Under the pieces are notes generated by a model, which saw only the letters and a program-made list of their open reading frames with translations, had not been told where the DNA came from and did no database searches. Shown one piece after another: positions 1,113-37,009 of a DNA stretch of 64,000 bases. The stretch is taken from IMG/VR virus record IMGVR_UViG_3300027782_000025, positions 1 to 64,000 of that record, one strand, 5' to 3'. The position numbers and the translations under genes are program-made. Position 1 is the stretch's first letter. Each line of letters begins with the position of its first letter.

Positions 1113-1292
1113 ATGATGATGTTTGCAATGTTTGGCGTTTCGGTATTATTGGGCTGTGCTGGCTATGTCGCTGCTATCAATGCAAGCCAGATCGACATAA
1201 GCCTCGCCTTTTTCATCTCCTTCTTGGCCACAGCTGGACAAATCGTGACCGCCTTTATGGCTGGACTCTGCGTGGACCCTCCACGCAACTAG
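1113..1292 (+). CDS. Small membrane protein (2 TM)
   Basis: AGGAGAG SD; two hydrophobic segments. Confidence 0.7.
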   Translation: MMMFAMFGVSVLLGCAGYVAAINASQIDISLAFFISFLATAGQIVTAFMAGLCVDPPRN

Positions 1293-1301
1293 ATTTCAGG
1301 T

Positions 1302-1354
1302 GATCGGTCTCCTGTGTGGGAGAGGGTGAGGAGATTGCTCCGCCCTCTCTTTTT
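1302..1354 (+). terminator. Repeated GATCGGTCTCCTGTGTGGG + hairpin terminator, copy 1
   Basis: Stem GAGAGGG/CCCTCTC, then T tract; homologous to 1879, 3941, 6897. Confidence 0.7.
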
Positions 1355-1931: not shown

Positions 1932-2048
1932 ATATCCATGGGATTTACAGCGGAGCCCCCGCTTGTTACAGAGAAGAGGCGGGGGGAGGCGGAGGCGACC
2001 AGTGTGGTGGCCGCGCTCCCCCCGCGAGACACACACGGAGAGTTTGCT

Positions 2049-2716: not shown

Positions 2717-2823
2717 TACGGTTTCCAGAGAGGAAAACGCGGGGTTGCCGGTGGCGGCCCCGCTTGTTACAGAGAAAAGTGGAAGCCACAGTGGCGACCA
2801 AGAAACACACAAAGGAGAGAAAA

Positions 2824-3258
2824 ATGGCAGAAATGAATCTTGACCTTTTCCGTTTTAACAGCACTGAAGCCAGTTTGTCTTTTAGTTCGTTTCACGAGAA
2901 AAACTGCGAATTCGGTGGTGCAGAGTCTGGTGTAGGTGAGAATCGATGGTCTTATAACATCGAAAAAGACGGTTCGACAAATTACAAAGATGACTTTTTT
3001 GATAATGATCGATGCGGCGGAGGACCAGATGAATATAGTGACTCTTTAAGTGAACCTAGTCCAGTTCCTACAAAAGAAGATGCGATAAAAGAAATAGAGA
3101 GTTTAATCGAAGGCAAAAGAAAGACATTGGCCGATTTGGAAGCCTTCTTAACAGCTTTCCAGACTGCCCCAGGACCTTACACAGACTTGGGTGACTACTG
3201 GAAGTTCGAAGCTAGCGAGGACGAGGACGAGGACGAAGACGAAGACGAAGACGAATAG
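2824..3258 (+). CDS. Very acidic protein with (ED)n tail
   Basis: SD AGGAGAG; GARGAC hexamer repeat encodes EDEDEDEDEDEDE. Confidence 0.75.
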   Translation: MAEMNLDLFRFNSTEASLSFSSFHEKNCEFGGAESGVGENRWSYNIEKDGSTNYKDDFFDNDRCGGGPDEYSDSLSEPSPVPTKEDAIKEIESLIEGKRKTLADLEAFLTAFQTAPGPYTDLGDYWKFEASEDEDEDEDEDEDE

Positions 3259-3363
3259 TCCGGTTTCCAGAGAGGAAAGCGGGGTTGCCGCTGGTGACCC
3301 CGTTTGTTACAGAGAAAAGTGGAAGCCGCTGTGGTGACCACAGAACACACACGGAGAAAAGAA

Positions 3364-3600
3364 ATGTTTACAGCGCGAATCAGCGATGGGAAGACGTCAG
3401 GAAAACTGTTCAGCGGCAAGCAAGCCGTTAACATAATGAAAAAGGCGGCGATCGACGCCAAAAAGGGCAAGGGCGCTTTTCGCTTGGAGCTGAGCGAGAA
3501 CAACAGGCTTTGCGTGGTGGCCTTCGGCAAAACGGCAGTTGAAGCCGCGTCATATGGTGCGGCGATCCACAGAAAGGAAGTCAGGGAGGGCAGGCGCTAG
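3364..3600 (+). CDS. Hypothetical basic early protein
   Basis: Cassette promoter and ACACACGGAG leader. Confidence 0.75.
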   Translation: MFTARISDGKTSGKLFSGKQAVNIMKKAAIDAKKGKGAFRLELSENNRLCVVAFGKTAVEAASYGAAIHRKEVREGRR

Positions 3601-3688: not shown

Positions 3689-3931
3689 ATGACGACAAAA
3701 GAATGCCAGACAGTGAGACGACAAAGGGTCGAGTTCCAAATCGCCTTGGCCGGTAATTGTGACCAATGGGTTCCAGCCTGTGGCGGGACCGAGTTGCCTT
3801 TCCGATCAAGGTCTGGACGATCTTTGCACTACATGTACAACCCCCAGCAAAAACGCCACGCTTACCTTGACACCGCGACGGACGTGATTCTCACTGATCA
3901 AGAGGCGGACGCGTTCATGGAGCGTGTTTAA
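3689..3931 (+). CDS. Hypothetical phage protein (WVPACGGTE motif)
   Basis: SD AAGGAGAG, promoter 3621-3649. Confidence 0.75.
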   Translation: MTTKECQTVRRQRVEFQIALAGNCDQWVPACGGTELPFRSRSGRSLHYMYNPQQKRHAYLDTATDVILTDQEADAFMERV

Positions 3932-3940
3932 TTTTTAGGT

Positions 3941-3992
3941 GATCGGTCTCCTGTGTGGGGGAGGGTGAGGAGTTTGCTCCGCCCTCCCTTTT
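3941..3992 (+). terminator. Repeated terminator element, copy 3
   Basis: Stem GGGAGGG/CCCTCCC, T tract. Confidence 0.7.
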
Positions 3993-6882: not shown

Positions 6883-6896
6883 ACAATTTTTAGGGG

Positions 6897-6949
6897 ATCG
6901 GTCTCCTGTGTGGGGGAAGGTGAGGAGTTTGCTCCGCCTTCCCTTTTTT
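6897..6949 (+). terminator. Repeated terminator element, copy 4
   Basis: Stem GGGAAGG/CCTTCCC (compensatory change vs copy 3), T tract. Confidence 0.7.
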
Positions 6950-7033
6950 CATATATATTGCGTCCGTGGCTCCGCTTGTTACAAGGGAGCATGGAAGGCC
7001 ACTGTGGCCTCCCGAAACACACGGAGCGACGAC

Positions 7034-7231
7034 ATGTTTTACGTTTTCAACCGAGCAGGCGACGCCGGCTATCACGAGATAAAGAACGAAAAAGGTGAGG
7101 TCATAGCGGACGCCTATGATACCGAGGAACAAGCCAGAGGTACGTTGGAAGCTCTGGGCCTTCCCTCTGACGATCTCGAGATCGTCTACGACCAAGCACA
7201 GTGGGACAACATCGGCTTGGAATATCGCTAG
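7034..7231 (+). CDS. Hypothetical acidic early protein
   Basis: ACACACGGAG leader. Confidence 0.7.
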   Translation: MFYVFNRAGDAGYHEIKNEKGEVIADAYDTEEQARGTLEALGLPSDDLEIVYDQAQWDNIGLEYR

Positions 7232-7331
7232 ACGACGGCGGCGGCGGGGTTGCACCAGCGGCCCCTGTCTGCTACAAAGAGGAAGCGGAGGCCGACGTGG
7301 CAACCGCAAAACACACACACGGAGAAAAGAA

Positions 7332-7658
7332 ATGAAGATCAAAGAGCTAATCTACAGAGACACGCAGAACTCCATTCTCTGCGACGAACGAAGCGAGCTA
7401 TTGGCGCTGTTCAGCGTCGAGCATGATGGGCACCAAGGTCATCTCCTTTATGAGGCGACCATCGACAGGCACAACACCGACTCTGAGTGCTATTGCGACA
7501 TCGAAAGCGTAACAAAGGACACGATTGCTTACGACGGTGCCATCGTCGACGCGCTCAACATCGACGTCTGGAAAATGGTGCCGAAATACACCAAAGACAC
7601 CGCCACCGACGACGAAGTATGGAAAAAGCTCGGTAAGCTCTGGGTCAGTCCAATATAG
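7332..7658 (+). CDS. Hypothetical, paralog of 12711-13085
   Basis: Shared LxALFSVxHxGxxGxxLYEAT and YxCDIxSxT motifs. Confidence 0.75.
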   Translation: MKIKELIYRDTQNSILCDERSELLALFSVEHDGHQGHLLYEATIDRHNTDSECYCDIESVTKDTIAYDGAIVDALNIDVWKMVPKYTKDTATDDEVWKKLGKLWVSPI

Positions 7659-8605: not shown

Positions 8606-9166
8606 ATGAAAAAACGACAATCTTGGACAAGAAAACACGCGGCTGTCCTCGCAGAATGCTTCTTCGGTGACGAAGCCGCGATGCTAAAAGCCGCGCTAGA
8701 ATTCGAACAAAACGGAGAATACTGGTTTCCGCCAGAAGGAGGAATCCGCGACATGTTCAAATACATCATCGGCAGTGCGTTAAGATCCACATTCTGGACC
8801 AAAACAATACTGCATCTCGATAAAGACAGACGCATTGAAAGCCGCATAAATCTAAAAGACGTTACCGATATCAGCAAAATCACTGAGAAACTAAAGCTGT
8901 CTCGGTCAGTCCCACTCTATAAGGGCAACGAACTTGTCGGATACGCGATAAGTGCGAGAGATCATGATTTCCTGCAAAAAATCCTTGAATACGCGAAAAG
9001 CACACTGCCAATAGAAGAACCCCGAAGCGTGGCCAGAGTAAAATACCAACGACTAAAAACCGGCTTACCCGGCCTCAGGGGGGTTACGCCGCCGCCTCGG
9101 CCTGTTACAGTGATAAGAGAGGGGGCCGCAGTGGCGCCCGCAGGATACACACGGAGATCAAAATGA
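8606..9166 (+). CDS. Hypothetical protein
   Basis: SD AAGGAG; 3' end runs through the next promoter cassette. Confidence 0.7.
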   Translation: MKKRQSWTRKHAAVLAECFFGDEAAMLKAALEFEQNGEYWFPPEGGIRDMFKYIIGSALRSTFWTKTILHLDKDRRIESRINLKDVTDISKITEKLKLSRSVPLYKGNELVGYAISARDHDFLQKILEYAKSTLPIEEPRSVARVKYQRLKTGLPGLRGVTPPPRPVTVIREGAAVAPAGYTRRSK

Positions 9167-10527: not shown

Positions 10528-10599
10528 TGGGACGGGTGGGGATCGAACCCACTTCCTTAGTGTTATGAGCACTCTGCTCGGCCGTTGAGCTTCCGTCCC
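10528..10599 (-). tRNA. tRNA with CAT anticodon (elongator Met or Ile2), atypical, no encoded CCA
   Basis: Acceptor GGGACGG/CCGTCCC, D stem GCTC/GAGC, anticodon loop CTCATAA, T arm GTGGG-TTCGATC-CCCAC, discriminator A. Confidence 0.85.
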
Positions 10600-11480: not shown

Positions 11481-11551
11481 CCTGTAGCAAGCCGAGAAGC
11501 CTTTGTAAACAGTGTTTGAGGGTTTACAGGCGGGCGCCGGCTTGTTACAGG
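11481..11551. promoter_or_regulatory. Divergent promoter pair
   Basis: TTTACA-N17-TACAGG on both strands, -35 boxes 13 bp apart. Confidence 0.75.
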
Positions 11552-11601
11552 GAGAGGAGCGGGGACCGCAGTGGTGACCGCGAAACACACGGAGTAGAAA
11601 A

Positions 11602-11793
11602 ATGTTTACAGTTGTGCAGTTTGAGTGCGGCGAGACGGTTGTGGCGACCAGGACCTTTGGCCCCTTCGGGACCACTATTGAGGCCCACGTTTACGCACAG
11701 AACGTGTTCCCCGGCCTGAGCGTCGACGAGTACGGCAGAGGCGTGACTGAGGACGGAGACCCCGTCTACCAAGTGACACCACTGTCCAAGTAG
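11602..11793 (+). CDS. Hypothetical, paralog of 10612-10836
   Basis: ACACACGGAG leader. Confidence 0.75.
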   Translation: MFTVVQFECGETVVATRTFGPFGTTIEAHVYAQNVFPGLSVDEYGRGVTEDGDPVYQVTPLSK

Positions 11794-13179: not shown

Positions 13180-13860
13180 ATGGAAAATAGCTTCTTTGGT
13201 GACAAAAGAGTCCTTTTAAAATTTGATAAAAGAGACCAAGAATTCGAGAAATGGTTACTGAATTGTGAAGATCAAGCAAATACCATAGCATATATTAATG
13301 GGGTAATCGATGGAAGATGGCCAGAAGCAGAGCCGATCTTAATGAAAACAGAATACGCCGTAGGATATGCAGATAAATTCATTAAAGGAAGATGGCTTGA
13401 AGCCGAGCCATATATAATGAAAAACCCAATATTGGCCTATTGTTACGCTGAAGAAGTTATAAAAGGAAGATGGCTAGAAGCCGAACAAACCATAATGACA
13501 GATCCAGAATGCACCATCGCCTATGCTTTAGAAATCATCAAAGGAAGATGGATAGAAGCAGAACCTTTTATAAAGACTTCCCCAGCATGTGCCGCGGCGT
13601 ACGCTATCGGTATCACCAAGATGAGATGGGAAGACACACAGCTTGAATTGCGTATACTTGAATGTACGACAGAGTTAAACTACATCAGAAATCCTTCATC
13701 TGACTATTGGCAACATTCATGGGGAACCGGTGTTACTAAATACGTTTATGCCAGAATGGTTGCTAAAACATCTTGGAAAAAGCTGTATGCCGAAGTTAAA
13801 GCCACGCATGCCGAGATCACATGTTACGATAACATTAATCTCGTCGGTGTCGAAGAGTAG
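13180..13860 (+). CDS. 26-aa repeat (GRWxEAEPxI) solenoid protein
   Basis: Repeats with 78-bp period; ends DNINLVGVEE like the modules of 39607-44634. Confidence 0.85.
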   Translation: MENSFFGDKRVLLKFDKRDQEFEKWLLNCEDQANTIAYINGVIDGRWPEAEPILMKTEYAVGYADKFIKGRWLEAEPYIMKNPILAYCYAEEVIKGRWLEAEQTIMTDPECTIAYALEIIKGRWIEAEPFIKTSPACAAAYAIGITKMRWEDTQLELRILECTTELNYIRNPSSDYWQHSWGTGVTKYVYARMVAKTSWKKLYAEVKATHAEITCYDNINLVGVEE

Positions 13861-17185: not shown

Positions 17186-17497
17186 ATGCTAAACTGGCTC
17201 AGAGAAAAATGGACCGTCAAACAAACACCCTGCAGTGGAGCCACCCCCAACTGCCACATAATATCCGCCGCCACCGGCAAAATCATCTTCAAGGATAACC
17301 GGTACGGCCGGTCTCTAGAAAGCGCCACCCTCATGAGCGCCGCCCCAGAACTCTACGAGGCCGCAGAAAACGCATACTGTGACCTCCTAAATATCCTCTC
17401 AAGCATTGACCCAGAAAAGAAAAGCCTAGCTTGGGAGACCATAGACCAACTACAGAACGCGCTCAAAAAAGCTACCAGCTACCACAACGAGGAATAA
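17186..17497 (+). CDS. Phage hypothetical (LxSAAPELYEA family)
   Basis: SD AAGGAG; AAP(E/D)L motif also in 32721-33086. Confidence 0.7.
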   Translation: MLNWLREKWTVKQTPCSGATPNCHIISAATGKIIFKDNRYGRSLESATLMSAAPELYEAAENAYCDLLNILSSIDPEKKSLAWETIDQLQNALKKATSYHNEE

Positions 17498-18153
17498 TGG
17501 CTAAAAAGCAACCACCAAGGCCAAGACACCCCGATGTCGACAAAGCCTGGGAACAACACCATAAGCTATTAAAATATTGGGCCTCTAAATGTAAAAGAAT
17601 ATTCGGCGGCCATGTAAACACATATCTATCCGAACTTTATATAAAGCTCAACAACGACCTATGGCTGTTCGACCCATCAAGAGGAGTAAAGTTCTCAACC
17701 TATTTCTCTACCCAAATACTTGGATACCTATACCGCATCGTCAGACTAGAATCAGAAGCCGAAATGGCCACTTGGGCCGGCACCTATTCAAAAAGCAAAA
17801 CCAGCTTCAAATGCAAAGTATTCAGCGAACAATGCTGCAACATAGATCGACAAGAGTTTAAAGACAAAAGAGATTACTACAACTGGGTGCACGATATGAT
17901 AGAAGAAATCGGTGGAAGAGAAGAAGCATGGTACTGGCTCACCTTCAACATAAGCGCCAGATCGATAGATATAATCCACCGCCGATTCGTCCTAGGGCAC
18001 ACCCTAGAAGAAATCGGCCGGCATTATAATGTGACTAGAGAAAGAATAAGACAATTAGAGTTTTTAGCGATGGCCACAATCAAAGAACGATTCGGTAACA
18101 ATAAAAAAATCGAAACACTAATCAAAAGATATGGCTTAAAATTTAAAGATTAA
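17497..18153 (+). CDS. RNA polymerase sigma-70 family factor
   Basis: Region 2 FDPSRGVKFSTY; region 4 TLEEIGRHYNVTRERIRQLE. Confidence 0.9.
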   Translation: MAKKQPPRPRHPDVDKAWEQHHKLLKYWASKCKRIFGGHVNTYLSELYIKLNNDLWLFDPSRGVKFSTYFSTQILGYLYRIVRLESEAEMATWAGTYSKSKTSFKCKVFSEQCCNIDRQEFKDKRDYYNWVHDMIEEIGGREEAWYWLTFNISARSIDIIHRRFVLGHTLEEIGRHYNVTRERIRQLEFLAMATIKERFGNNKKIETLIKRYGLKFKD

Positions 18154-19923: not shown

Positions 19924-20289
19924 TTATTTCTTTTTGCGCTTCGGTAATTGGATTTCGATCAATTGAATTATGGCTAAGAGCCCGGAGATAGCGTCGCGTA
20001 TCTTGTCGCCTCGAGAGATTTCTACTGGTTTCTTTTCTTTCCCCCTTTTCTTAGCGCTATTAACATATATCTTGTGTTTAAACACCGGGACTGCGCGGCC
20101 ACGCTGATTCAGCCTAGTGGTGCCGTCCGAGTAAATCTCACCGTTAGACAGCAGCCGGTGCCTGATGGTTTTAACACTAGCCGGCTTACTATCCTCCATA
20201 TGTCGAAGCAATTCATCATCAGTCAGTCCTAGGGCGCTGTTCTTAAACGCTCCCAATACTTTCTTTGAGGCGTCATTGTCTCTTGGCAT
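19924..20289 (-). CDS. Winged-HTH-like DNA-binding protein
   Basis: GLTDDEL...RHRL...GEIYSDG..R..RGR pattern, similar to 51755-52252. Confidence 0.6.
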   Translation of the reverse strand: MPRDNDASKKVLGAFKNSALGLTDDELLRHMEDSKPASVKTIRHRLLSNGEIYSDGTTRLNQRGRAVPVFKHKIYVNSAKKRGKEKKPVEISRGDKIRDAISGLLAIIQLIEIQLPKRKKK

Positions 20290-20301: not shown

Positions 20302-20330
20302 TTTACAAGATAAATACCGTTGGTTACAGA
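20302..20330 (+). promoter_or_regulatory. Promoter TTTACA-N17-TACAGA for traR-csrA operon
   Basis: Same class as the early cassettes (GG instead of TG). Confidence 0.6.
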
Positions 20331-20370
20331 AATTTCGAGAGTATTTACCGTACTAATAGGAGGATTTATA

Positions 20371-20544
20371 ATGAGAATATGCCGAGCATGTGGCCAGGAG
20401 ATTCCCGCGGGCCGTGTTGAAGCACTACCCAATGTAAAGTATTGTATAAAATGTAGCGACGCTTTTACAGCAGAGATACAGGCTGACGACGTCGTAGCTA
20501 AAGCCAGTGTAAGTGGACGGAACGGATTCGCACCCAAAGATTAA
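20371..20544 (+). CDS. TraR/DksA C4 zinc-finger protein
   Basis: CRACGQEIPAGRVEALPNVKYCIKC; SD AGGAGG. Confidence 0.85.
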   Translation: MRICRACGQEIPAGRVEALPNVKYCIKCSDAFTAEIQADDVVAKASVSGRNGFAPKD

Positions 20545-20554
20545 GGAGGACCTA

Positions 20555-20749
20555 ATGGGACTTATAGTATCACGGAAGTTAAATGAATCAATCATTATAA
20601 AAACCGATCTTGGACAGATAGAAATCATCGTTACCAACATCCACACCTCGAGAGTCAGTGTAAAGGTCGAATGCCCGCGTGAATTCCTGATTCTCAGAAA
20701 AGAATTAGACAAGACGCCGGTGCCCAAAATACAAGAACAGAAGGTATAA
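20555..20749 (+). CDS. csrA: Carbon storage regulator CsrA/RsmA homolog
   Basis: MGLIVSRKLNESIII..IEIIVTNI..SRVSVKVECPREFLILRKEL; SD AAGGAGG. Confidence 0.8.
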   Translation: MGLIVSRKLNESIIIKTDLGQIEIIVTNIHTSRVSVKVECPREFLILRKELDKTPVPKIQEQKV

Positions 20750-20751
20750 TA

Positions 20752-21660
20752 ATGAAACATGTCATCCCGTTCATCTGCTACTGGTCAGCGACAATATTAG
20801 TATTAACAGCAGTGTCACCGTTTTTAATGCTCGCCCTGATGCTGCAGCCATTCTTAGACACCGGCATAAAGAAATTATTCCCAGCTATACTAAAACATTG
20901 GACCGACTTAGTACGGGACACCAATGATCCGATCGGGGCCCTAGAACGCCAAGAACAACGCGAACGCGCAGAGGAAGAACGACTTGCGGCGCTTCCGCCG
21001 GCCAAACCCAAAGACTTCTTCAGCACCCTCGACTACATGACAAGAAAGACCTATATCGACATCGGCCGACGGTTAAGCTACCACCCCGACAACGACCCCG
21101 AGCGCTCAGACACCAAAAACCCATTCAGGCCTAGCTTTGATATGGTCGCGGACGCCGAACTACTTGAAAAGCTAAAGCACAAATGGTTATACAAAGCGCA
21201 AGAACTAATGCTCACCAACAATTTCACAAAATCAAAATGGGACGCCGACGGTTACACAAGAATAAATGATATATTCTTCGCGCCATACAGCGTGCACGGG
21301 AGCCCAGAGATACAAGTAACTAACGAAAAAGAGCACCAATGGCTGAAAGAATGCTGGTCCATCGCTTACGATAAATTAGAATACATTAAGGCGCTAATGA
21401 ACAGAGCTTACGAAAAAAACCACGCCCTGAACAAAAACCCCGAATTCGTATTCCGATATAAGACAGTAAGTAAACAACTAGCCGCATTAAACCACAAATA
21501 TGATGTCAGTATTAATGAAGTCAGATTAATGGCCAGTGAACTAATAGGAAAACGAAAAGCGGCATGCGACCCAATTAAGTTCTTCTTTGACTTCCGAGCA
21601 GCCACGCTGCAGAACGACATGTACACCTTCTTCAAGAACGCTAACAACGGGAGAAACTAA
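20752..21660 (+). CDS. Hypothetical membrane-anchored protein
   Basis: N-terminal hydrophobic segment; 302 aa. Confidence 0.7.
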   Translation: MKHVIPFICYWSATILVLTAVSPFLMLALMLQPFLDTGIKKLFPAILKHWTDLVRDTNDPIGALERQEQRERAEEERLAALPPAKPKDFFSTLDYMTRKTYIDIGRRLSYHPDNDPERSDTKNPFRPSFDMVADAELLEKLKHKWLYKAQELMLTNNFTKSKWDADGYTRINDIFFAPYSVHGSPEIQVTNEKEHQWLKECWSIAYDKLEYIKALMNRAYEKNHALNKNPEFVFRYKTVSKQLAALNHKYDVSINEVRLMASELIGKRKAACDPIKFFFDFRAATLQNDMYTFFKNANNGRN

Positions 21661-22076
21661 TGACCAAGATAACGATCAAAAACTCTGACTACCACCTCTA
21701 CGCCGACAAACGCGCCAAAACCGCGTTCAAAAAATACGCGTGCGAGCCAAAGGACCTCCTGTCCCCACTGACAGACCTAGAATTCAGAAGTCCAGACGAC
21801 CAAAAACACATCGCCGTAGAGGTCAAAATAAACAACTCAGTGGAAGGCAGCTTTCTCATACAGCCTGCACTAATCGAAACCCAAAAATGGTTCATCATGT
21901 CCTTCACCAACATCACAGAACCCCCTATAGACATAAATTCTAAGAAATATAAATTAAAACTCGCGTGCGGCCATGATGTCATTGGAGACAAGTCTGTAGA
22001 CAACAAATACATAAACCTATATCACGATTGCCAAATCTGTAAACGCGAAAAGACAAATCCGCCCGGACAAAACTAA
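21660..22076 (+). CDS. Hypothetical protein
   Basis: TAATG coupling. Confidence 0.7.
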   Translation: MTKITIKNSDYHLYADKRAKTAFKKYACEPKDLLSPLTDLEFRSPDDQKHIAVEVKINNSVEGSFLIQPALIETQKWFIMSFTNITEPPIDINSKKYKLKLACGHDVIGDKSVDNKYINLYHDCQICKREKTNPPGQN

Positions 22077-22089
22077 AACGGGGGAAGCA

Positions 22090-22620
22090 ATGAAAATACT
22101 TGACGCGCTTAAAAAATACGATCGATATAACTACTTCGACATGTTTTTTGAACAGACCGAAATACATAACCAAAGAACGGGCAAAACCCGATCATTCGAC
22201 GGCATCTACAGATTATACTATACAGCAGAACGCGACGGCGAAGACGTCGTTTGTGTGTTGTACAAAGGCGAAAACACAGACTTGCCGCCAACCATTCTAC
22301 CAATAGTCGTCAAAGAATGGACCTTTGAAGACGGTGGAGACGTAGAAAGAGAAGTAATAAACTTCATCGGCGTAGAAGGCATTAAAATCGAAGGAAAATC
22401 TGGGCAATTCGACATGGCCTGGTTCGAGAAAGTACCCAAGCGATATCCAACGACGGGAGAAGAATCCCTAGCCAAAATAGTAGCGACATCAGCGCTATAT
22501 CACCACCGTGAAACAATACTAGAAAAATTAGAAGATTTAGCTAAAATACACGAAGAAGATATGGATTATCTGATGGAAGCACAAAGAACAATCGACTACC
22601 TGCGCTACGGCACGCCCTAA
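22090..22620 (+). CDS. Hypothetical protein
   Basis: SD GGGG; operon continuation. Confidence 0.7.
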   Translation: MKILDALKKYDRYNYFDMFFEQTEIHNQRTGKTRSFDGIYRLYYTAERDGEDVVCVLYKGENTDLPPTILPIVVKEWTFEDGGDVEREVINFIGVEGIKIEGKSGQFDMAWFEKVPKRYPTTGEESLAKIVATSALYHHRETILEKLEDLAKIHEEDMDYLMEAQRTIDYLRYGTP

Positions 22621-22627
22621 CCCCACT

Positions 22628-23275
22628 CTAACCACCTCGGGAGCCAGAATAACCACCGCGCTTATCAGCAAGCACCTCACCGTCCCTAAACTTAGCATAT
22701 CCCTTAAAACCCATCCCCGATTCAAAATAACGTAGTTTAAAAGTAAGAAATGAAAAACGATTAGACATGATTTGGAGCGCCTCAACCGGGGGCGTCCAGG
22801 CAGTGTTAAAAGTGTAGAATAAACAAGCCTGATCATCAGGACCAGTCGTCTCACTGAAAATAGTAGACTCAGAAGTATCCCACTTAGTGCCCCAGTGATG
22901 GATGCGCCAGGTATACCAGGTCTTATGACCATAAAGATCATGATTTTTCTTATAGATAACAAGCGCCTCCTTGATCGCCTCCCTATTACCCTCCGGCTGC
23001 AGCGCCATAAACTTATCGAACGCGGCGACCCGGTCATCGCCCTCGAATTCATAAAGCGTCTTGATCATCGCGAACTGTTCATCTGAACCGTATACAATAT
23101 CAAAGACAATCTCCTTAGAACTCGCTTGGGCATCAGCCAGCGACGCTGGGGTGGGAACGATGTTATTGATCTTAAAAACAGAATCATCGTCCGGGCACTT
23201 AAGTGCAAGCTTAAACTCCTGGACCTTATCTGCTGGGCCAATAACTTTTAAATCACATTCGCACCAGTTAGGCAT
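22628..23275 (-). CDS. DUF1281/YubB ferredoxin-like protein
   Basis: MPNWC...WYTWRIHHWGTKW...FNTAWTPP motifs. Confidence 0.75.
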   Translation of the reverse strand: MPNWCECDLKVIGPADKVQEFKLALKCPDDDSVFKINNIVPTPASLADAQASSKEIVFDIVYGSDEQFAMIKTLYEFEGDDRVAAFDKFMALQPEGNREAIKEALVIYKKNHDLYGHKTWYTWRIHHWGTKWDTSESTIFSETTGPDDQACLFYTFNTAWTPPVEALQIMSNRFSFLTFKLRYFESGMGFKGYAKFRDGEVLADKRGGYSGSRGG

Positions 23276-31484: not shown

Positions 31485-32231
31485 ATGACACCAATCACCA
31501 CCACCGTCGAACTAGACACAAGCACAGCCGCCAACCTGGGGACCAACGGCGGCTACAGACAACACCCAACCATAAACAACCAAACCAACACAAGCGCAAC
31601 CTACCCAGCCAAAATAATAAGCACAAGCAACACCGGCACCATAATCCAAACAATCCGCGCCATAACCATCACCGCCTACCCAACATACAACCCAAACAAC
31701 AACAACCCAACCCAAAACATTCTAAGCGCCACCAACCCAACAAACCCGACCCAACCAACAAACCCCACCAACCCCACCAACCCCACAGAGCCCCAAGCAA
31801 CTGACATAAGCATATCAACCAGCATCATCCTAACCTTCGACGCCATCTCCAAAACCATCTACACCCTAAACCAACCCAGCGGCCCAGATATAAGCCCATA
31901 CCTCCAAATGCAAATCTGTAACTGGACCGGTTACCTAAATGCCACCCCAAAAGGAACAACCAACATAATACCCTACAACGGCGCCCTCGCCGGAGAAAAT
32001 AAAACGACCACCCCAAACCTAAAAAACACTACCATCACCTTTACCACGACAAACACAGCCAAAACCACAAACGGCATCACCGCCATCTGGTTCTACAAAG
32101 GACAACCCATCAACAAAGAAACACACGACCTATTAACCAGCCAAGGATATAACATACCCCTCCTAGGGAATACCGGATACGCTCAAAGTAACATCAACCT
32201 ACTCCTCACCCTCTCCGGACCCACCTCCTAA
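31485..32231 (+). CDS. T/N/P-rich low-complexity protein
   Basis: 248-aa ORF in extremely A/C-rich DNA; TNP repeats. Composition lowers stop frequency, so it could be spurious. Confidence 0.5.
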   Translation: MTPITTTVELDTSTAANLGTNGGYRQHPTINNQTNTSATYPAKIISTSNTGTIIQTIRAITITAYPTYNPNNNNPTQNILSATNPTNPTQPTNPTNPTNPTEPQATDISISTSIILTFDAISKTIYTLNQPSGPDISPYLQMQICNWTGYLNATPKGTTNIIPYNGALAGENKTTTPNLKNTTITFTTTNTAKTTNGITAIWFYKGQPINKETHDLLTSQGYNIPLLGNTGYAQSNINLLLTLSGPTS

Positions 32232-32720
32232 AAAGACCCGTTTCCTCCTAGGAAACCATTCACCTCCCCATAATCCCTTGTAACAAAATGCGCCCCAAGT
32301 TGCAATTGCACCACACCCATTTGCAATTGCAAAAAGAACCCCAACGCACAAAAAAGTCCAAAAAAAAAACCAAAGACATAGCCTAAAAAAGAAGGAAAAA
32401 AGACGAAAATTGCAAGCATGCGTAAATTGCGTCGCGTAAAAAAGAGAAAAAAGAGAAATAGTGGACTGACTCAACACTCTGCTTCTCGCCCATTTCTAAA
32501 TTTTCATCTTCTTTTCTTATTTCCCAAACGTTTTTTTCGAAATAATTTATAGTGGGCGTTCAACGAACGATATCCTTTTTTTTCTTTTTTACCAATGATC
32601 CGGATGTATAGTTTTTATGGTTTCTTTTTTTTGGGTTTTTATGGGGTTTTTATAGTCCGAGTCTTTTGATTTATGTATTAGTGATATTCGGGCTATTATT
32701 AGTAAAGTTAGGGGGGATTA
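32232..32720. other. Non-coding region with strand-skew inversion, candidate replication origin
   Basis: A/C-rich + strand to the left, T/G-rich to the right; two TGCAATTGCA palindromes 21 bp apart. Confidence 0.45.
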
Positions 32721-33282: not shown

Positions 33283-33846
33283 TTATAATGGTATTTGGAC
33301 GGCCCATGAGCTGTCTTTAAACGCTTTTACGTTTTTTTCTCCGAATATTTCATCTACGGCTTGTTTTACTCCGCTGTGGTAGTCATGTCCGCTTATTATT
33401 CCTCCGGCTTTTACTTTTTCTTTCCAGTTCTTTATGTCGTTTTTTACTGATCGGTAGTCGTGGTCTGCATCTATATATATTAGATGGTAGGAGCGGTTTG
33501 GTGTTTCTTTTGCAAGTTGGTTTGAGTTTACTTTTCTTTCTATGATGTTCGGGTTTCTTTTTTTCGTTTCTAGGAAGTCTTTGTATACTGTCTGGGCTCT
33601 TTGTGGTGGTTTTATAAATTCTTCCCAGATGTCGCAGCAGGTTATTTCTCCTACGTATTGGGCTATGAGTTCTGCTGATGCTCCTGCGTATGATCCTATT
33701 TCTAGAGCTGTCCAGGTTTTGTCTATTTTAAAGTGGTCTAGTAGGTCTTTTAGGCCGTGTAGTCTGTTGATGGCTGGCATTTGGGCGTTATAGTATTCGT
33801 CTGAGTGGTTTTCTGTTATTCTGTATCTGGCTAGGATGTGTTCCAT
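33283..33846 (-). CDS. Class I SAM methyltransferase (Methyltransf_24-like)
   Basis: LEIGSYAGAS; IYIDADHDY; GGIISGHDY. Confidence 0.85.
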   Translation of the reverse strand: MEHILARYRITENHSDEYYNAQMPAINRLHGLKDLLDHFKIDKTWTALEIGSYAGASAELIAQYVGEITCCDIWEEFIKPPQRAQTVYKDFLETKKRNPNIIERKVNSNQLAKETPNRSYHLIYIDADHDYRSVKNDIKNWKEKVKAGGIISGHDYHSGVKQAVDEIFGEKNVKAFKDSSWAVQIPL

Positions 33847-33967
33847 TTTCTTTCCTTTTTTTGGCGTTTTCTTTATATACTTTTTGTTTTTTTTTGTCTT
33901 GGCGGGCTTTTGGGTTAGCTTTTGCACTCTGATGCAAGGGAGATATCTTCATTGGGCTTGAATGTTA

Positions 33968-34597
33968 TTATTTAGCCGTGATATGTGTTATTTTTATTAG
34001 GCAATTGTTGCTTTTGTTTTTGGAAAGCGGCCAATTTATTATTTCATAATTTAAGTCTATAGTTTCTCTTAGTATATCTAGTCCTTTAATATACTTTGTA
34101 ATTGTGATGTGGTTATTATGTATGTCTTCGATATAATAAACGCCGTTTTTGTTTAATTTATCTAAGGAGGAGGTTAGGAATGATATGTTGGCTTCTGAAT
34201 TGTGTTCTCCGTCGTCTATGATGAGGTCGAAGGTTATATTTTTTAGTGATTCTTGGTTCCACATTTCTTCGATGGATATTTTATCTCTCTGGTCGACGTA
34301 GAATGTTTTTATTCTTTCTTCGTCTTTTAATATAGTTTCATCGATGTCTGCGCCATAGATGGTGGCGTTGGGGAAGTATTCTCTCCAGCCTCTTAGTGAT
34401 GCGCTTGGTGTCCCTCCTTGCCCCATGTTAGCCGGTATTTTTGGATTGGTTGTGCCTATTCCCAGTTCGAATACGTTTTTTATTTCGAGCTTTTGGTCAT
34501 TAAATTGTTTAAAGTATTCTATTGTATAATTATGTATACCGTTTCCTTTATCGCTACCGTTTTTTGTCATTATTTTGCATAGGGGTGTTACATCCAT
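33968..34597 (-). CDS. Class I SAM methyltransferase-like protein
   Basis: GSDKG...HNYT; FELGIG; WREYFPNA.IYGADID; DLIIDDG.H. Confidence 0.8.
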   Translation of the reverse strand: MDVTPLCKIMTKNGSDKGNGIHNYTIEYFKQFNDQKLEIKNVFELGIGTTNPKIPANMGQGGTPSASLRGWREYFPNATIYGADIDETILKDEERIKTFYVDQRDKISIEEMWNQESLKNITFDLIIDDGEHNSEANISFLTSSLDKLNKNGVYYIEDIHNNHITITKYIKGLDILRETIDLNYEIINWPLSKNKSNNCLIKITHITAK

Positions 34598-34838
34598 TGT
34601 TTTTTTCTTTCTTAAAGTCGAGGTGATTAACCTGCGCCATGGCGGTGCCGGTTTATCTATTTTTTTTTGATTCTACGTTGGACGCAAGGATGATATATGT
34701 GGTGGCCTTGCAGCATACGGGGTCTTATTTATTAAAAATGTTAGTGTCTGTCGGACATTTATAAAAATTGATTATTTTAAAATAATTGACTTAAATATAT
34801 AATGTTTATAAGATTAATTTTTTAGGGCTAAAATCACT

Positions 34839-35516
34839 ATGATCGATGAAAATTTCAAAATTAATCCGTGCGATCCCGATGATTTTACGAGATGTTCTTT
34901 ATGTTTTGATATAGGGGCACATATAGGTAATTGGTCTTTGCAAAATATAAATAATTTTAATAAAATAATTGCGTTAGAGCCATCTACTAAGACTTTTGAT
35001 ATATTAGTGAAAAATTGTGCTAAACACAACATCATTTGTTTAAATTATGCTATAAGTAATGATATTAGAGAACAGATCGATTTTTATGAAGCCGATGAGG
35101 CTTCTGATATATCTTCGATAAATAAGAACTGGTTATGCTCGAAAGAATCAAGATTTTTTGGTCTTAAACACTCTTTAACCACCTGTAAATCTACCACCTT
35201 AGATAGGCTTGTAGAATTGTATGGAACACCTGATCTTATTAAAATTGATGTAGAGGGAGCAGAAGATTTAGTAATTCTATCTTTATCAAAGAAGGTTAAG
35301 ACTCTTTGCTTTGAATGGGCGCGAGAATCTAATTCTGTCACCACACAATGTATTGATCATCTTCTAAGCATCGGATTTACTAAATTTTATGTTCAGTTTG
35401 AGGATAAATATAGCTATGTTCCAAATGAAGAAGAATATACGGATGATTTAAATATTATTGAGTATTTGCTCACCAAAGAATTAAAATGTGATTGGGGTAT
35501 GGTTTGGGCTATTTGA
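34839..35516 (+). CDS. FkbM-family methyltransferase
   Basis: FDIGAHIG; ALEP; TTLD; IKIDVEGAE. Confidence 0.9.
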   Translation: MIDENFKINPCDPDDFTRCSLCFDIGAHIGNWSLQNINNFNKIIALEPSTKTFDILVKNCAKHNIICLNYAISNDIREQIDFYEADEASDISSINKNWLCSKESRFFGLKHSLTTCKSTTLDRLVELYGTPDLIKIDVEGAEDLVILSLSKKVKTLCFEWARESNSVTTQCIDHLLSIGFTKFYVQFEDKYSYVPNEEEYTDDLNIIEYLLTKELKCDWGMVWAI

Positions 35517-35600
35517 ATTTTTAAAAACAATTCTTCTATAATAAATGAAGGTATTTATAATAAGTATTTCCATTAATCATTTTCTTCTAAAGGATAATAT

Positions 35601-36224
35601 ATGCTTCTTGATTTTATAGGATTAATAAAAAAGTATGATATGAAAATAAGAGGAGTGATACATGTCGGGTCACACCATGGGCAAGAAAATAATCTTTATA
35701 ATTTAATTAATGTTAAAAATAGGATTTTTTTTGAGCCTCTAGATTCTAATTTTTCTGTTTTAAAAAATAATATAGAGCCAACACACACCTTGGTCAAAAA
35801 AGCATTGGGAAATGATAATAAAAAGGTGAACATGTATGTGGAGAAGCAGAATTCTGGAATGTCAAGTTCGATCTTAAAACCGAAGTTACACATTACACAA
35901 TATCCGCATATTGTCTTCGATGAAACAGAAGTAGTCGAAATGATAAAATTAGATTCCTTTGAAAAAGATTTAACTGAATTTAATCTTATGGTAATCGATG
36001 TTCAAGGATATGAGCTCGAAGTCTTTAAAGGTGCTCAGAATTCACTAAAAAATATCGATTATATTATTTCGGAGATAAATAGAGATGAACTTTATGAAAA
36101 CTGTGCTAGGATCGATCAGCTCGTAGAATTTTTGAGTATTTATGGGTTCGAGTTGGTAGAGAGTAATTGGGCTGGAGGCACATGGGGAGATGGGCTATTT
36201 ATTAAAAGAGGCAAAAGCTTATGA
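35601..36224 (+). CDS. FkbM-family methyltransferase
   Basis: VIHVGSHHGQE; FFEP; IDVQGYELEVFKG. Confidence 0.9.
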   Translation: MLLDFIGLIKKYDMKIRGVIHVGSHHGQENNLYNLINVKNRIFFEPLDSNFSVLKNNIEPTHTLVKKALGNDNKKVNMYVEKQNSGMSSSILKPKLHITQYPHIVFDETEVVEMIKLDSFEKDLTEFNLMVIDVQGYELEVFKGAQNSLKNIDYIISEINRDELYENCARIDQLVEFLSIYGFELVESNWAGGTWGDGLFIKRGKSL

Positions 36225-37009
36225 TAACCGTTAATAATTTTGGCCCATCTGGTCGATTAGGTAATCAAATTTTTCAATTCGCATTGTTGTTCGGTTTACA
36301 TAAATTACATGGATATGAGATACATCTTCCTTTAAATAATGGATGTGAATTTTGGAAATGTTTCGATATAAAAAATATAAAATTATATGATTATCTTATA
36401 AGAGATGACGTCAATACTTTTAAAGAAACATTGGGTTATAACAATTACGATGATTGTGTTTTACAGCAACCGGATAATACTGAATTTTATGGTTATTTTC
36501 AATCATATCTTTATTTTGACAGGTATAGATCCGAATTAATCGACTGCTTAAATTTTCATAATGATATAATCGAAAAAAGCGATAATATATTGTCAGGTTT
36601 TAAAGGCCCACTTATAAGCATTCACGTTAGAAGAGGTGATTATATAGATCACCCGCAATGGGGAGATCTAATTAAAGAAGGATATTATGAAAAAGCTATA
36701 GAAGATATAAATGATAGCGAAGAGGTTTTAGTGTTTTCAGATGATATCGATTTTATTAAAGATTATTTTAAAACTAATAAAAATTTTAATATTATTGACG
36801 AAGATGAATACGTTTCTTTGTGCATGATGACCAAGTGCGAAAGACATATTATCGCGAATAGTAGCTTCTCATGGATGGGTGCTTATTTAAGTGGAAAGGA
36901 CAATGTCACTTGCCCAGAAACTTGGTTACCCTCTTTATTTCCGAAACCAAATGATATTCAAAAAGACATAACAAAACAATGTTGGAATAAAATAAAGTCT
37001 TTTATTTAA
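36221..37009 (+). CDS. Alpha-1,2-fucosyltransferase-like (GT11)
   Basis: GRLGNQIFQ; SIHVRRGDY; IIANSSFSWMGAYL. Confidence 0.9.
   Translation: MITVNNFGPSGRLGNQIFQFALLFGLHKLHGYEIHLPLNNGCEFWKCFDIKNIKLYDYLIRDDVNTFKETLGYNNYDDCVLQQPDNTEFYGYFQSYLYFDRYRSELIDCLNFHNDIIEKSDNILSGFKGPLISIHVRRGDYIDHPQWGDLIKEGYYEKAIEDINDSEEVLVFSDDIDFIKDYFKTNKNFNIIDEDEYVSLCMMTKCERHIIANSSFSWMGAYLSGKDNVTCPETWLPSLFPKPNDIQKDITKQCWNKIKSFI

What the first reader, a model, noticed from the sequence alone, without database searches (positions are those of the whole stretch)
20302..20749. Adjacent TraR/DksA and CsrA homologs: paired transcription and translation hijack
Seen: a C4 TraR-like finger followed by a CsrA with the conserved N-terminal R and C-terminal R (LRKE), under one early-type promoter. 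Established: TraR mimics DksA/ppGpp on RNAP, and CsrA dimers bind GGA motifs overlapping SDs. Inference: the ACACGGAG leaders (2034, 3347, 7018, 7317, 9148, 11586) resemble the CsrA consensus ACAnGGA, so phage CsrA may shut off the early cassette regulon or reprogram host mRNAs.
Basis: partly seen in the sequence, partly recalled or inferred. Interest (0 to 1): 0.65.

Follow-up and report, generated by a model that had tools for sequence, protein, structure and literature searches.

The report
Phage CsrA beside helix-less zinc ribbon
An uncultured freshwater jumbo phage carries, in one conserved early operon, a real but stripped-down CsrA RNA-binding regulator next to a small zinc-ribbon protein that only resembles TraR in its zinc finger, so the proposed "double hijack" of transcription and translation is only half supported.

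Summary
Both ORFs exist: a 57-aa C4 zinc ribbon (20371-20544) and a 64-aa CsrA (20555-20749). They share a promoter-like element of the phage's early class and lead a five-gene operon that is syntenic in all related metagenome contigs and under purifying selection.

The zinc ribbon matches only the finger of TraR/DksA. It lacks the N-terminal helix with the DxxDxA motif that TraR needs. It belongs to a rare, unnamed family with a conserved C-terminal RNGFAPxD tail, so a TraR-like mechanism is not supported.

The CsrA keeps the RNA-binding residues of strands β1 and β5. Its nearest cellular relatives are FliW-partnered CsrAs of Planctomycetota, Verrucomicrobiota, Spirochaetia and Bacillota. It has lost the helix that FliW binds.

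ACACGGAG is real (6 copies against 0.9 expected), but it is the Shine-Dalgarno sequence abutting a CA box in one paralogous leader family. A(N)GGA at the ribosome-binding site occurs in 85% of genes. No such leader passes a multi-site CsrA-target test, and ACANGGA is not enriched.

The densest GGA cluster at any gene start is at csrA itself, which suggests autoregulation.

Phage CsrAs are already documented. This one is a new variant of moderate interest.

The parts
20302..20330 (+). Promoter-like element TTTACA-N17-TACAGA (TGGTTACAG), a member of the phage's early-region promoter class
   Evidence: Conserved in relatives L003-L006 and L039-L041. The diverged clade (L035) has TTGACC-N17-TTAAAT instead.
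20371..20544 (+). 57-aa zinc-ribbon protein with a DksA/TraR-type C4 finger (C4, C7, C25, C28) and a conserved C-terminal GRNGFAPKD tail. It has no N-terminal helix.
   Evidence: Pfam 34.7 bits. It matches only the finger part of the TraR/DksA models. In the AF2 model the ribbon has pLDDT above 80 and the tail looks disordered. The family has 71 representatives sharing the S.S.RNGFAP.D-COOH tail. Compared with L035, 22 codons carry synonymous-only changes and 13 carry nonsynonymous changes.
20495..20584 (+). GGA-dense translation-initiation region of csrA: 7 GGA, of which 5 are A(N)GGA, including the AAGGAGGA Shine-Dalgarno sequence. Candidate autoregulatory site.
   Evidence: This is the maximum among 298 rough gene starts (elsewhere at most 3 A(N)GGA and 5 GGA). 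The density is kept at 3-4 A(N)GGA and 5-6 GGA in L039, L007 and L035. The stretch ranks in the top 6 of 120-nt windows on the + strand of the 274-kb record.
20555..20749 (+). 64-aa CsrA-family protein. The β1 (LIVSRK) and β5 (FLILRKEL) RNA-binding residues are kept. The C-terminus is short and proline-containing, without the FliW-binding helix.
   Evidence: Pfam 40 bits. Alignment to E. coli CsrA. Alignment A1 with cellular relatives. The top 13 Foldseek PDB matches are all CsrA/RsmA/RsmE.
20752..21660 (+). 302-aa ORF with a hydrophobic N-terminus. Third gene of the operon (TAATAATG junction with csrA). Function unknown.
   Evidence: Syntenic in all relatives.
21660..22076 (+). 138-aa ORF. 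Fourth gene of the operon; its start overlaps the previous stop codon. Function unknown.
   Evidence: Syntenic in relatives.
22090..22620 (+). 176-aa ORF. Fifth and last gene of the operon; a convergent gene follows at 22628. Function unknown.
   Evidence: Syntenic in relatives.
19924..20289 (-). 121-aa gene transcribed divergently from the operon and always present next to it. No family hit. Possible regulator (speculative).
2033..2040 (+). ACACGGAG: the Shine-Dalgarno sequence of a type-B early leader (ATG at 2049)
3349..3356 (+). ACACGGAG: the Shine-Dalgarno sequence of a type-B early leader (ATG at 3364)
7019..7026 (+). ACACGGAG: the Shine-Dalgarno sequence of a type-B early leader (ATG at 7034)
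7317..7324 (+). ACACGGAG: the Shine-Dalgarno sequence of a type-B early leader (ATG at 7332)
9149..9156 (+). ACACGGAG: the Shine-Dalgarno sequence of a type-B early leader (ATG at 9163)
11587..11594 (+). ACACGGAG: the Shine-Dalgarno sequence of a type-B early leader (ATG at 11602)

Best explanation
The locus is the head of a conserved five-gene early operon of an uncultured freshwater jumbo phage (record 274.6 kb, about 70% complete).

Gene 2 encodes a minimal CsrA-family RNA-binding protein. Shown: it has the family signature, the β1 and β5 RNA-binding residues, purifying selection and conserved synteny. Its closest cellular relatives are CsrAs encoded directly after fliW in flagellar operons. 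Unlike them, it ends 6-13 residues after β5 and lacks the I/V..N helix that FliW needs.

Inferred: it works as a CsrA dimer that binds GGA at ribosome-binding sites and blocks translation, and the host's protein antagonist FliW cannot switch it off. It would then impose a "CsrA-on" state on host mRNAs, with flagellin as the classical FliW/CsrA target. It would also limit its own synthesis through the unusually GGA-dense csrA initiation region. Some phage mRNAs may be targets too, but nothing singles out the ACACGGAG leaders.

Gene 1 is not a TraR mimic. It is a zinc-ribbon-only member of the DksA/TraR superfamily, from a rare family defined by a conserved C-terminal S.S.RNGFAPxD tail on a probably disordered linker. 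That tail is most likely a docking peptide for an unknown partner. The finger might still seat on the rim of the RNA polymerase secondary channel (inference only).

The adjacency of the two genes is specific to this phage lineage. Beyond co-expression there is no evidence that they act together.
For: - Identity: HMM matches; alignment to E. coli CsrA; fold.
- Context: the record is an IMG/VR virus record. Operon synteny holds in L003-L007, L035-L041 and L053.
- Selection: codons with synonymous-only changes equal or outnumber nonsynonymous ones in most comparisons. The GRNGFAPKD tail is invariant despite synonymous changes.
- Lineage: the nearest cellular CsrAs (52-56% identity) follow FliW in a flagellar operon. 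Relatives in genome contigs are Planctomycetota, Verrucomicrobiota, Spirochaetia and Bacillota. Ten of these 24 loci have a detectable FliW ORF directly upstream. Identity to E. coli CsrA is only 24%.
- FliW escape: FliW binding needs V51 and N55 in the first helix after β5 (PMC7829508). The phage protein has DKTPVPK there, or simply ends. The record has no FliW.
- Autoregulation: the GGA density at the csrA start is the genome maximum and is kept in diverged relatives.
- Zinc ribbon: finger-only matches, the TraR requirements, the family alignment with its conserved tail, and the disordered tail in the model.
- Precedent: phage and plasmid CsrAs are documented (PMC7366521, PMC11879866, PMC9928087). 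Eighty-eight phage records hold a CsrA.
Against: - No RNA-binding, dimerisation, FliW or RNA polymerase data exist for these proteins.
- The host is unknown, so it is not shown that it has FliW/CsrA or flagella.
- NCBIfam CsrA equivalog cut-offs are not reached (38 bits against 70). The protein is divergent.
- The GGA cluster lies partly in codons for the conserved GRNG peptide, so protein-level selection could explain it. My gene starts, transcription start sites and target test are home-made approximations.
- The monomer AF2 model shows a helix where β5 should be, and its fold matches are weak (E 0.04-0.3).
- The assignment to the "early" class rests on a shared motif, not on expression data.
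Confidence: 0.5

Rival explanations
1. The zinc finger acts like TraR (a DksA/ppGpp mimic on RNA polymerase). The phage CsrA binds the ACACGGAG leaders to shut off an early-gene cassette.
For: - Both genes are driven by the same promoter class as the cassette genes, so a negative feedback loop is conceivable.
- ACACGGAG contains A(N)GGA overlapping the Shine-Dalgarno sequence and is mostly unpaired.
- Type-B leaders are purine-rich at the 5' end, with extra GGA or AGAGA.
Against: - The TraR effector helix and DxxDxA motif are absent.
- The motif is a paralogous leader feature, and its junction varies.
- 85% of genes have A(N)GGA at the ribosome-binding site, and none of the 8 leaders meets multi-site criteria.
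- ACANGGA is not enriched.
- There is no hairpin presentation, and the upstream GGA lies in a conserved stem.
- The more numerous type-A leaders have ACACAC separated from GGAG by TTTTTA.
Confidence: 0.1
2. The two proteins are partners. The zinc ribbon, through its conserved tail, binds and modulates the phage CsrA, acting as a phage-encoded substitute for FliW or CesT.
For: - The two genes are tightly coupled (10-nt gap), co-conserved across this phage group including the 57%-identical L053.
- The tail looks like a docking peptide.
- The CsrA has lost the FliW site.
Against: - Other members of the zinc-ribbon family occur without a neighbouring csrA, in both phage-like and cellular contexts.
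- Other phage and cellular csrA loci have no such finger nearby.
Confidence: 0.08
3. Chance neighbours with unrelated accessory roles. CsrA is a recently captured host gene with marginal function, and the zinc ribbon is one of many small phage zinc-finger proteins.
For: - Small zf-dskA_traR proteins are common in phages (phrog_54; Atlas clusters).
- CsrA occurs sporadically in about 1% of phages (PMC7366521).
- The adjacency is confined to one lineage.
Against: - Both genes are kept intact, syntenic and under purifying selection across lineages diverged to 57-77% (zinc ribbon) and about 59% (CsrA core) identity.
- Knockdown of a phage csrA reduced plaque size in another phage (PMC11879866).
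Confidence: 0.2

Closest known systems
CsrA/RsmA encoded by mobile elements: phage CsrAs (survey PMC7366521; PTXU04 gp28 knockdown, PMC11879866), plasmid RsmQ of pQBR103 (PMC9928087), and the Pseudomonas phage F116-type 'Bci' CsrA-domain proteins
   Same: It is a small CsrA-family protein carried by a mobile element. The β1 and β5 RNA-binding residues are retained. The presumed role is to take over host post-transcriptional control.
   Different: - Those are gammaproteobacterial-type CsrAs (45-100% identical to E. coli CsrA). This one is 24% identical to E. coli CsrA.
- It finds no phage in INPHARED by tblastn and groups with FliW-partnered CsrAs.
- It is shorter (57-65 aa), has no C-terminal helix, and sits in a jumbo phage of an unknown, probably non-gammaproteobacterial, host.
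FliW-partnered CsrA of Bacillota, Campylobacterota, Spirochaetia and the PVC group (structure 5DMB; PMC7829508)
   Same: These are the closest sequence relatives: an 11-residue identical block VSRKLNESIII, the APRE/CPRE and ILRKEL motifs, and 52-56% identity.
   Different: - It lacks the C-terminal extension and the I/V51..N55 helix needed for FliW binding.
- It has a 3-residue insertion after β2.
- No fliW is adjacent or anywhere in the record.
TraR of the F plasmid and its phage homologues (lambda Orf73, P2 Orf82; PMC9239242; PDB 6N57)
   Same: It has a C4 zinc finger with the same CxxC-x17-CxxC spacing and the IPxxR..LP..xxC signature. It is a small early or accessory phage protein.
   Different: - There is no N-terminal helix, no DxxDxA motif and no TraR-like C-terminal helix.
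- Instead it has a disordered linker and a conserved RNGFAPxD-COOH tail shared by a separate family.
- It scores 21-35 bits against cut-offs of 60-108.
E. coli csrA autoregulation: CsrA represses its own translation through several GGA sites in its leader (Yakhnin et al. 2011, Mol Microbiol; cited from my own knowledge)
   Same: There is a cluster of GGA motifs over and upstream of the csrA Shine-Dalgarno sequence (7 GGA within 90 nt).
   Different: Here most of the sites lie inside the upstream gene's coding end. Binding has not been tested.

Membership tests
CsrA/RsmA family (PF02599) | Family HMM match above the curated threshold | tested here: met
   Pfam scores 40.0 bits against a cut-off of 27. 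PHROG 9500 'CsrA-like regulator' matches at E = 7.6e-5.
CsrA/RsmA family (PF02599) | Equivalog-level match (NCBIfam TIGR00202 or NF002469) | tested here: not met
   It scores 38.1 bits against 70.1, and 31.5 bits against 73. It is a divergent member, not an orthologue of the housekeeping CsrA.
CsrA/RsmA family (PF02599) | RNA-binding residues of β1 (L2, L4, R6, R7) and β5 (V40, V42, R44, I47), in E. coli numbering (Mercante et al. 2006, cited from my own knowledge) | tested here: met
   The alignment gives L3, V5, R7, K8 and F44, I46, R48, L51. These positions are invariant or conservative across alignment A1.
CsrA/RsmA family (PF02599) | Intertwined homodimer with a five-stranded fold | tested here: inconclusive
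   The monomer AF2 model has mean pLDDT 76. The top 13 Foldseek PDB hits are all CsrA/RsmA/RsmE, but at E 0.04-0.3 and TM about 0.5. The dimer itself was not assessed.
CsrA/RsmA family (PF02599) | Binds GGA-containing RNA | not testable with these tools
   This needs EMSA, ITC or CLIP.
FliW-regulated CsrA subfamily | C-terminal helix with conserved I/V51 and N55 that contacts FliW (PMC7829508) | tested here: not met
   After RKEL the phage proteins read DKTPVPK..., or end at MSKERK. The cellular relatives read YETICINQ....
FliW-regulated CsrA subfamily | fliW adjacent to csrA | tested here: not met
   There is no FliW (PF02623) in the 274-kb record. Ten of the 24 nearest cellular loci have one directly upstream.
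TraR (F plasmid and phage TraR/Orf73 group) | C4 zinc-binding globular domain | tested here: met
   The spacing is CxxC-x17-CxxC. PF01258 scores 34.7 bits against 24.9. It aligns to TraR residues 35-61.
TraR (F plasmid and phage TraR/Orf73 group) | N-terminal helix carrying DxxDxA that reaches the RNA polymerase active site (critical for function, PMC9239242) | tested here: not met
   The protein begins MRIC, so the first Cys is residue 4. The models match from position 33-37 onward only. No DxxDxA occurs anywhere in the 57 residues. The 57-aa length is conserved in relatives.
TraR (F plasmid and phage TraR/Orf73 group) | Full-length model score above the curated cut-off | tested here: not met
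   TIGR02419 scores 34.8 against 59.7. NF010268 (TraR) scores 21.2 against 108. The DksA models score 18-26 against 105-289.
TraR (F plasmid and phage TraR/Orf73 group) | Binds RNA polymerase and changes initiation at rrn and amino-acid promoters | not testable with these tools
   This needs in-vitro transcription and binding assays.
Unnamed family: zinc ribbon with RNGFAPxD tail (defined here) | DksA/TraR-type finger followed by about 25 residues that end in S.S.(R/Q)NGF(A/S)Px(D/E)-COOH | tested here: met
   There are 71 representatives at E <= 1e-3 in 1.84 billion proteins. Most matches run to the last residue of both proteins. Alignment A4 has N51, G52 and F53 nearly or fully invariant. 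Neither Pfam nor NCBIfam has a model for the tail.

The most novel reading that the evidence does not exclude
A phage has taken a CsrA from the ancient FliW-CsrA-flagellin partner-switch lineage and removed the FliW docking helix. The result is an antagonist-proof translational repressor that locks the host (possibly a planctomycete, verrucomicrobium or other non-gammaproteobacterium) into a CsrA-on state. It is expressed together with a member of an uncharacterised zinc-ribbon family whose conserved RNGFAPxD tail docks on a host machine (RNA polymerase rim, ribosome or CsrA itself). Together they would form a true two-protein take-over module.
Probability: 0.15. Interest if true: 0.65.

Novelty: new variant of a known kind. 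Interest (0 to 1): 0.38.

Why it matters
Phage-encoded CsrAs are known to exist, but almost nothing is known about what they do. The documented ones are close copies of gammaproteobacterial CsrA.

This one comes from the FliW-regulated branch and has lost the part the antagonist needs. That gives a concrete, testable idea of how a virus could override a protein-controlled (rather than sRNA-controlled) Csr system. It also gives a hint about the host of an abundant, uncultured freshwater jumbo phage.

The work corrects an attractive but unsupported reading, the TraR mimic and the CsrA "regulon" motif. It also flags a small, uncharacterised zinc-ribbon family with a strikingly conserved C-terminal peptide.

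Tried and rejected
- Complex prediction on the CsrA dimer plus the zinc ribbon returned "no answer" (score 0.00). This is not evidence either way.
No expression or transcription-start data could be obtained.
- Searches that found nothing: megablast and tblastn of the locus and of P0002 against INPHARED; the FliW-type CsrA P0014 against phages; the search for related loci in IMG/VR (the own record may be masked).
- I searched for a CsrB-like GGA-rich decoy RNA. The densest windows are coding repeats or antisense to genes. Rfam finds only a tRNA-Met.
- I considered the GGTTTCC-NNNGA-GGAAA hairpins as CsrA sites. This is rejected as a general explanation because the loops vary: AACGA, TGCGA, and CGGCA in relatives.
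- I considered that the first 32 kb (higher GC) is an assembly chimera. This is rejected because independent contigs span the junction with the same gene order.
- I considered the TTG start at 20320, which would extend the zinc-ribbon ORF. It adds 17 hydrophobic residues, has no Shine-Dalgarno sequence and no helix or DxxDxA motif, and relatives are called at 57 aa.
- DksA-like hits in 5 genomes of CsrA relatives match only the finger. They are not members of the tail family.
- No alternative genetic code was needed.
Full report
**What is there.**
The window is the first 64 kb of a linear IMG/VR virus record of 274,625 bp. CheckV estimates it at about 70% complete, which makes it a jumbo phage. 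It comes from a JGI lake metagenome (record Ga0209500_10000004).

At the reported place two short ORFs lie head to tail on the + strand.
- ORF A (20371-20544) encodes 57 aa and is preceded by TAGGAGGA. It has Cys at positions 4, 7, 25 and 28.
- ORF B (20555-20749) encodes 64 aa and is preceded by AAGGAGG. It starts MGLIVSRK and contains FLILRKEL.

Pfam places A in zf-dskA_traR (34.7 bits, cut-off 24.9) and B in CsrA (40.0 bits, cut-off 27). PHROGs gives "DksA-like zinc-finger protein" and "CsrA-like regulator". Each family occurs only once in the 274-kb record.

**Operon and conservation.**
The gap between A and B is 10 nt. The next ORF (302 aa) starts 3 nt after the csrA stop codon. A 138-aa ORF and a 176-aa ORF follow without room for signals, and convergent genes begin at 22628.

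The same five genes appear in every related metagenome contig that I could fetch, together with a divergent 121-123-aa gene upstream. These are L003-L007, L035-L041 and L053, from JGI, ENA and Logan assemblies. In these relatives the zinc-ribbon protein is down to 57% identical and the CsrA core about 59% identical. The zinc-ribbon protein is 57 aa in all of them.

Codon comparison shows purifying selection. Against L007, the zinc-ribbon gene has 14 synonymous-only and 2 nonsynonymous codon changes, and csrA has 16 and 9. Against L035 the counts are 22 and 13, and 15 and 21. Both genes are real. The "pair" is really the head of a five-gene operon.

**The promoter.**
Scanning the record for [TC][TCG]G[TCG]TACA[AG] followed by a Shine-Dalgarno sequence and an ORF start finds about 38 such modules. 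Their upstream hexamers are TTGACA, TTGCNN or TTTACA. All but one lie in the first 32.3 kb.

So the operon does carry the phage's "early-region" promoter type, with GG in place of TG. Calling it early rests on position and motif, not on expression data. The -10-like TACAGR is not canonical for sigma-70, and the generic scan does not report it.

**Why ORF A is not a TraR.**
Every TraR/DksA model matches only the finger: TIGR02419 positions 33-61 of 64, NF010268 (TraR) positions 36-62 of 73, PDB TraR 6n57 residues 35-61, and DksA 1tjl residues 113-140. All full-length curated cut-offs are missed by a wide margin.

TraR and its phage homologues need three elements. One of them is an N-terminal helix carrying DxxDxA, which reaches the active site and is critical for function (PMC9239242). 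ORF A begins three residues before the first Cys and has no DxxDxA anywhere.

AlphaFold models a confident ribbon (residues 1-30, pLDDT above 80) and a low-confidence tail.

An exhaustive HMMER search found 71 representative relatives among 1.84 billion proteins. They are 54-108 aa long. Most alignments run to the last residue of both proteins. Their alignment shows a conserved C-terminal S.S.(R/Q)NGF(A/S)Px(D/E)-COOH. In the phage clade GRNGFAPKD is invariant despite synonymous changes. Neither Pfam nor NCBIfam models this tail.

Members of the family occur in phage-like and cellular contexts. The Atlas look-alikes are short zf-dskA_traR clusters from Uroviricota and Planctomycetota.

ORF A is therefore a member of the DksA/TraR zinc-finger superfamily but of a different, uncharacterised family. 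A TraR-type mechanism fails a defining-feature test.

**What ORF B is.**
Aligned with E. coli CsrA it is 24% identical. L3, V5, R7 and K8, and F44, I46, R48 and L51, occupy the β1 and β5 positions known to bind RNA. These positions are invariant or conservative in the phage clade. The top 13 Foldseek PDB matches of a monomer model are all CsrA, RsmA or RsmE chains, though the scores are weak.

Its closest cellular relatives (52-56% identity, with an identical VSRKLNESIII block) are encoded directly after fliW in a flagellar operon. Relatives among 185,579 species genomes are Planctomycetota, Verrucomicrobiota, Spirochaetia, Bacillota and a Helicobacteraceae MAG. Ten of these 24 loci have a detectable FliW ORF immediately upstream.

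FliW binding needs I/V51 and N55 in the first helix after β5 (PMC7829508). The cellular relatives have ...RKELYETICINQ.... The phage proteins have RKELDKTPVPK..., or stop six residues after RKEL. The record has no FliW.

I infer a CsrA that came from the FliW-regulated branch and can no longer be antagonised by FliW.

**The ACACGGAG leaders.**
The 8-mer is over-represented: 6 copies against 0.91 expected. All six sit 6-8 nt before an ATG, inside one of two paralogous leader types that follow the early promoters.
- Type A is GGGTTcgAAACACACTTTTTAGGAG.
- Type B has a purine-rich start, a conserved GC hairpin, then AACACACAC and GGAG.

The conserved elements are the hairpin (8 pairs, 2 with compensatory changes), the CA box and the Shine-Dalgarno sequence. 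The junction between CA box and Shine-Dalgarno sequence is not conserved. Window 2764 has ACACACAAAGGAG. L035 has ACACACGGAGG where its orthologue in L037 has ACACACAGGAGG.

Further tests do not support a CsrA signature.
- The GGA of the Shine-Dalgarno sequence is mostly single-stranded and not presented in a hairpin loop. The upstream GGA lies in the conserved stem.
- A(N)GGA occurs in the Shine-Dalgarno window of 141 of 166 genes genome-wide.
- In a simplified CSRA_TARGET test (PMC4066749; primary sites only), none of 8 type-B leaders passes, against 13 of 166 background genes.
- The looser ACANGGA occurs 24 times against 26.6 expected.

The enrichment thus reflects duplication of a leader module, not selection for CsrA sites. 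A 5' stabiliser hairpin plus an unstructured CA-rich spacer is an ordinary design for strong translation. Repression by CsrA cannot be excluded, but it has no specific support.

**A better-supported target.**
The csrA initiation region itself (20495-20584) holds 7 GGA, 5 of them A(N)GGA. This is the maximum over all 298 rough gene starts in the record; elsewhere the maxima are 5 GGA and 3 A(N)GGA. It is also among the six densest 120-nt windows on the + strand.

The density is kept in L039, L007 and the diverged L035 clade (5-6 GGA), partly through different codons. This fits CsrA autoregulation as known in E. coli (my own knowledge). However, part of the cluster encodes the conserved GRNG peptide, so the inference is moderate.

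**Is the pairing meaningful?**
No C4 finger lies within 2.5-3 kb of csrA in six other CsrA-carrying phage lineages (Xanthomonas jumbo phage, F116, AUS531phi, BR228a, Vibrio D273, Bacillus Dartukuta). None lies near csrA in 27 cellular loci either. Family members of the zinc ribbon outside this phage group are not next to csrA.

A complex prediction gave no verdict. The adjacency is lineage-specific. Co-expression is shown, but cooperation is not.

**Comparison with what is known, and novelty.**
Phage CsrAs are documented: 30 phages in a 2020 survey (PMC7366521), 88 records in INPHARED by tblastn with E. coli CsrA, and a plaque-size phenotype on knockdown in PTXU04 (PMC11879866). Plasmid RsmQ shows that such proteins can take over host behaviour (PMC9928087).

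New here are the origin from the FliW branch, the loss of the antagonist-binding helix, the minimal size, the jumbo-phage early-operon setting, and the neighbouring zinc ribbon of the tail family. I rate this a new variant of a known kind, of moderate interest.

**Limits.**
- Gene starts, transcription start sites and the target test are my own approximations.
- The host is unknown.
- No expression data could be obtained.
- No biochemical property was tested.

Noticed in passing
window 297-32286 (also record position 155300): About 38 promoter-like modules: TTGaca/TTGCnn/TTTACA, 17 nt, then TG[TC]TACA[AG], each followed by a short leader, a Shine-Dalgarno sequence and an ATG. They are almost confined to the first 32 kb. 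The first hexamer often lies inside a GC hairpin (GGGGTTGC...GCCCC) that may double as the terminator of the preceding gene.
   Followed up: partly
window 1026, 2722, 3264, 4399, 5028, 7664, 12302, 13091, 15059 (+): The hairpin GGTTTCC-NNNGA-GGAAA occurs nine times directly after stop codons of early genes. The loops are AGAGA, AAGGA, AAGGGA, AACGA and TGCGA. Relatives have CGGCA and CGGTA. Its function is unknown; it could be an RNA 3'-end or processing element.
   Followed up: partly
window 2773-2826, 3313-3366, 6985-7036, 7278-7334, 9111-9165, 11551-11604; L035:991-1046; L037:519-575 and 1415-1472: The type-B early leaders share a two-tier GC hairpin near the 5' end with a GCAGU-like loop. 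It has 8 pairs, 2 of them with compensatory changes. It matches no Rfam family.
   Followed up: partly
window about 32000: There is a sharp compositional break. GC is 44-52% in 1-32 kb and 35-40% beyond, coinciding with the end of the early-promoter region. Independent contigs L050 and L051 span the junction with the same gene order, so it is not a chimera.
   Followed up: yes
window 1291-1353, 3930-3992, 6885-6947: Three copies (90-95% identical) of a 63-nt element contain a GC-rich inverted repeat followed by TTTT, which looks like a terminator (family D13).
   Followed up: no
window 10528-10599 (-): A tRNA-Met (CAT) gene lies within the early region.
   Followed up: no
window 17497-18153 (+): A 218-aa protein has a Sigma70_r4 domain and matches phrog_351 (RNA polymerase sigma factor). 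It is conserved 2 kb upstream of the operon in all relatives and is a candidate phage sigma factor for later promoters.
   Followed up: no
window 32163-32286 (-): An early-type promoter on the minus strand is followed by a purine- and GGA-rich leader. The leader has a hairpin GGUUUCC-UAGGA-GGAAAC that presents GGA in its loop. No clear ORF could be assigned downstream.
   Followed up: partly
window 13291-13584 (+): Four tandem coding repeats of about 75-78 nt (62-75% identical) lie inside the 226-aa ORF 13180-13860 (family D10).
   Followed up: no
window 19924-20289 (-): A 121-aa basic protein is transcribed divergently from the operon promoter and co-conserved with it. It matches no Pfam or PHROG family. 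It may be a regulator of the operon.
   Followed up: no
window 33283-37009: Just past the GC break lies a cluster of methyltransferase genes (Methyltransf_24, two Methyltransf_21) and a glycosyltransferase family 11 gene, according to the precomputed Pfam hits for the record.
   Followed up: no
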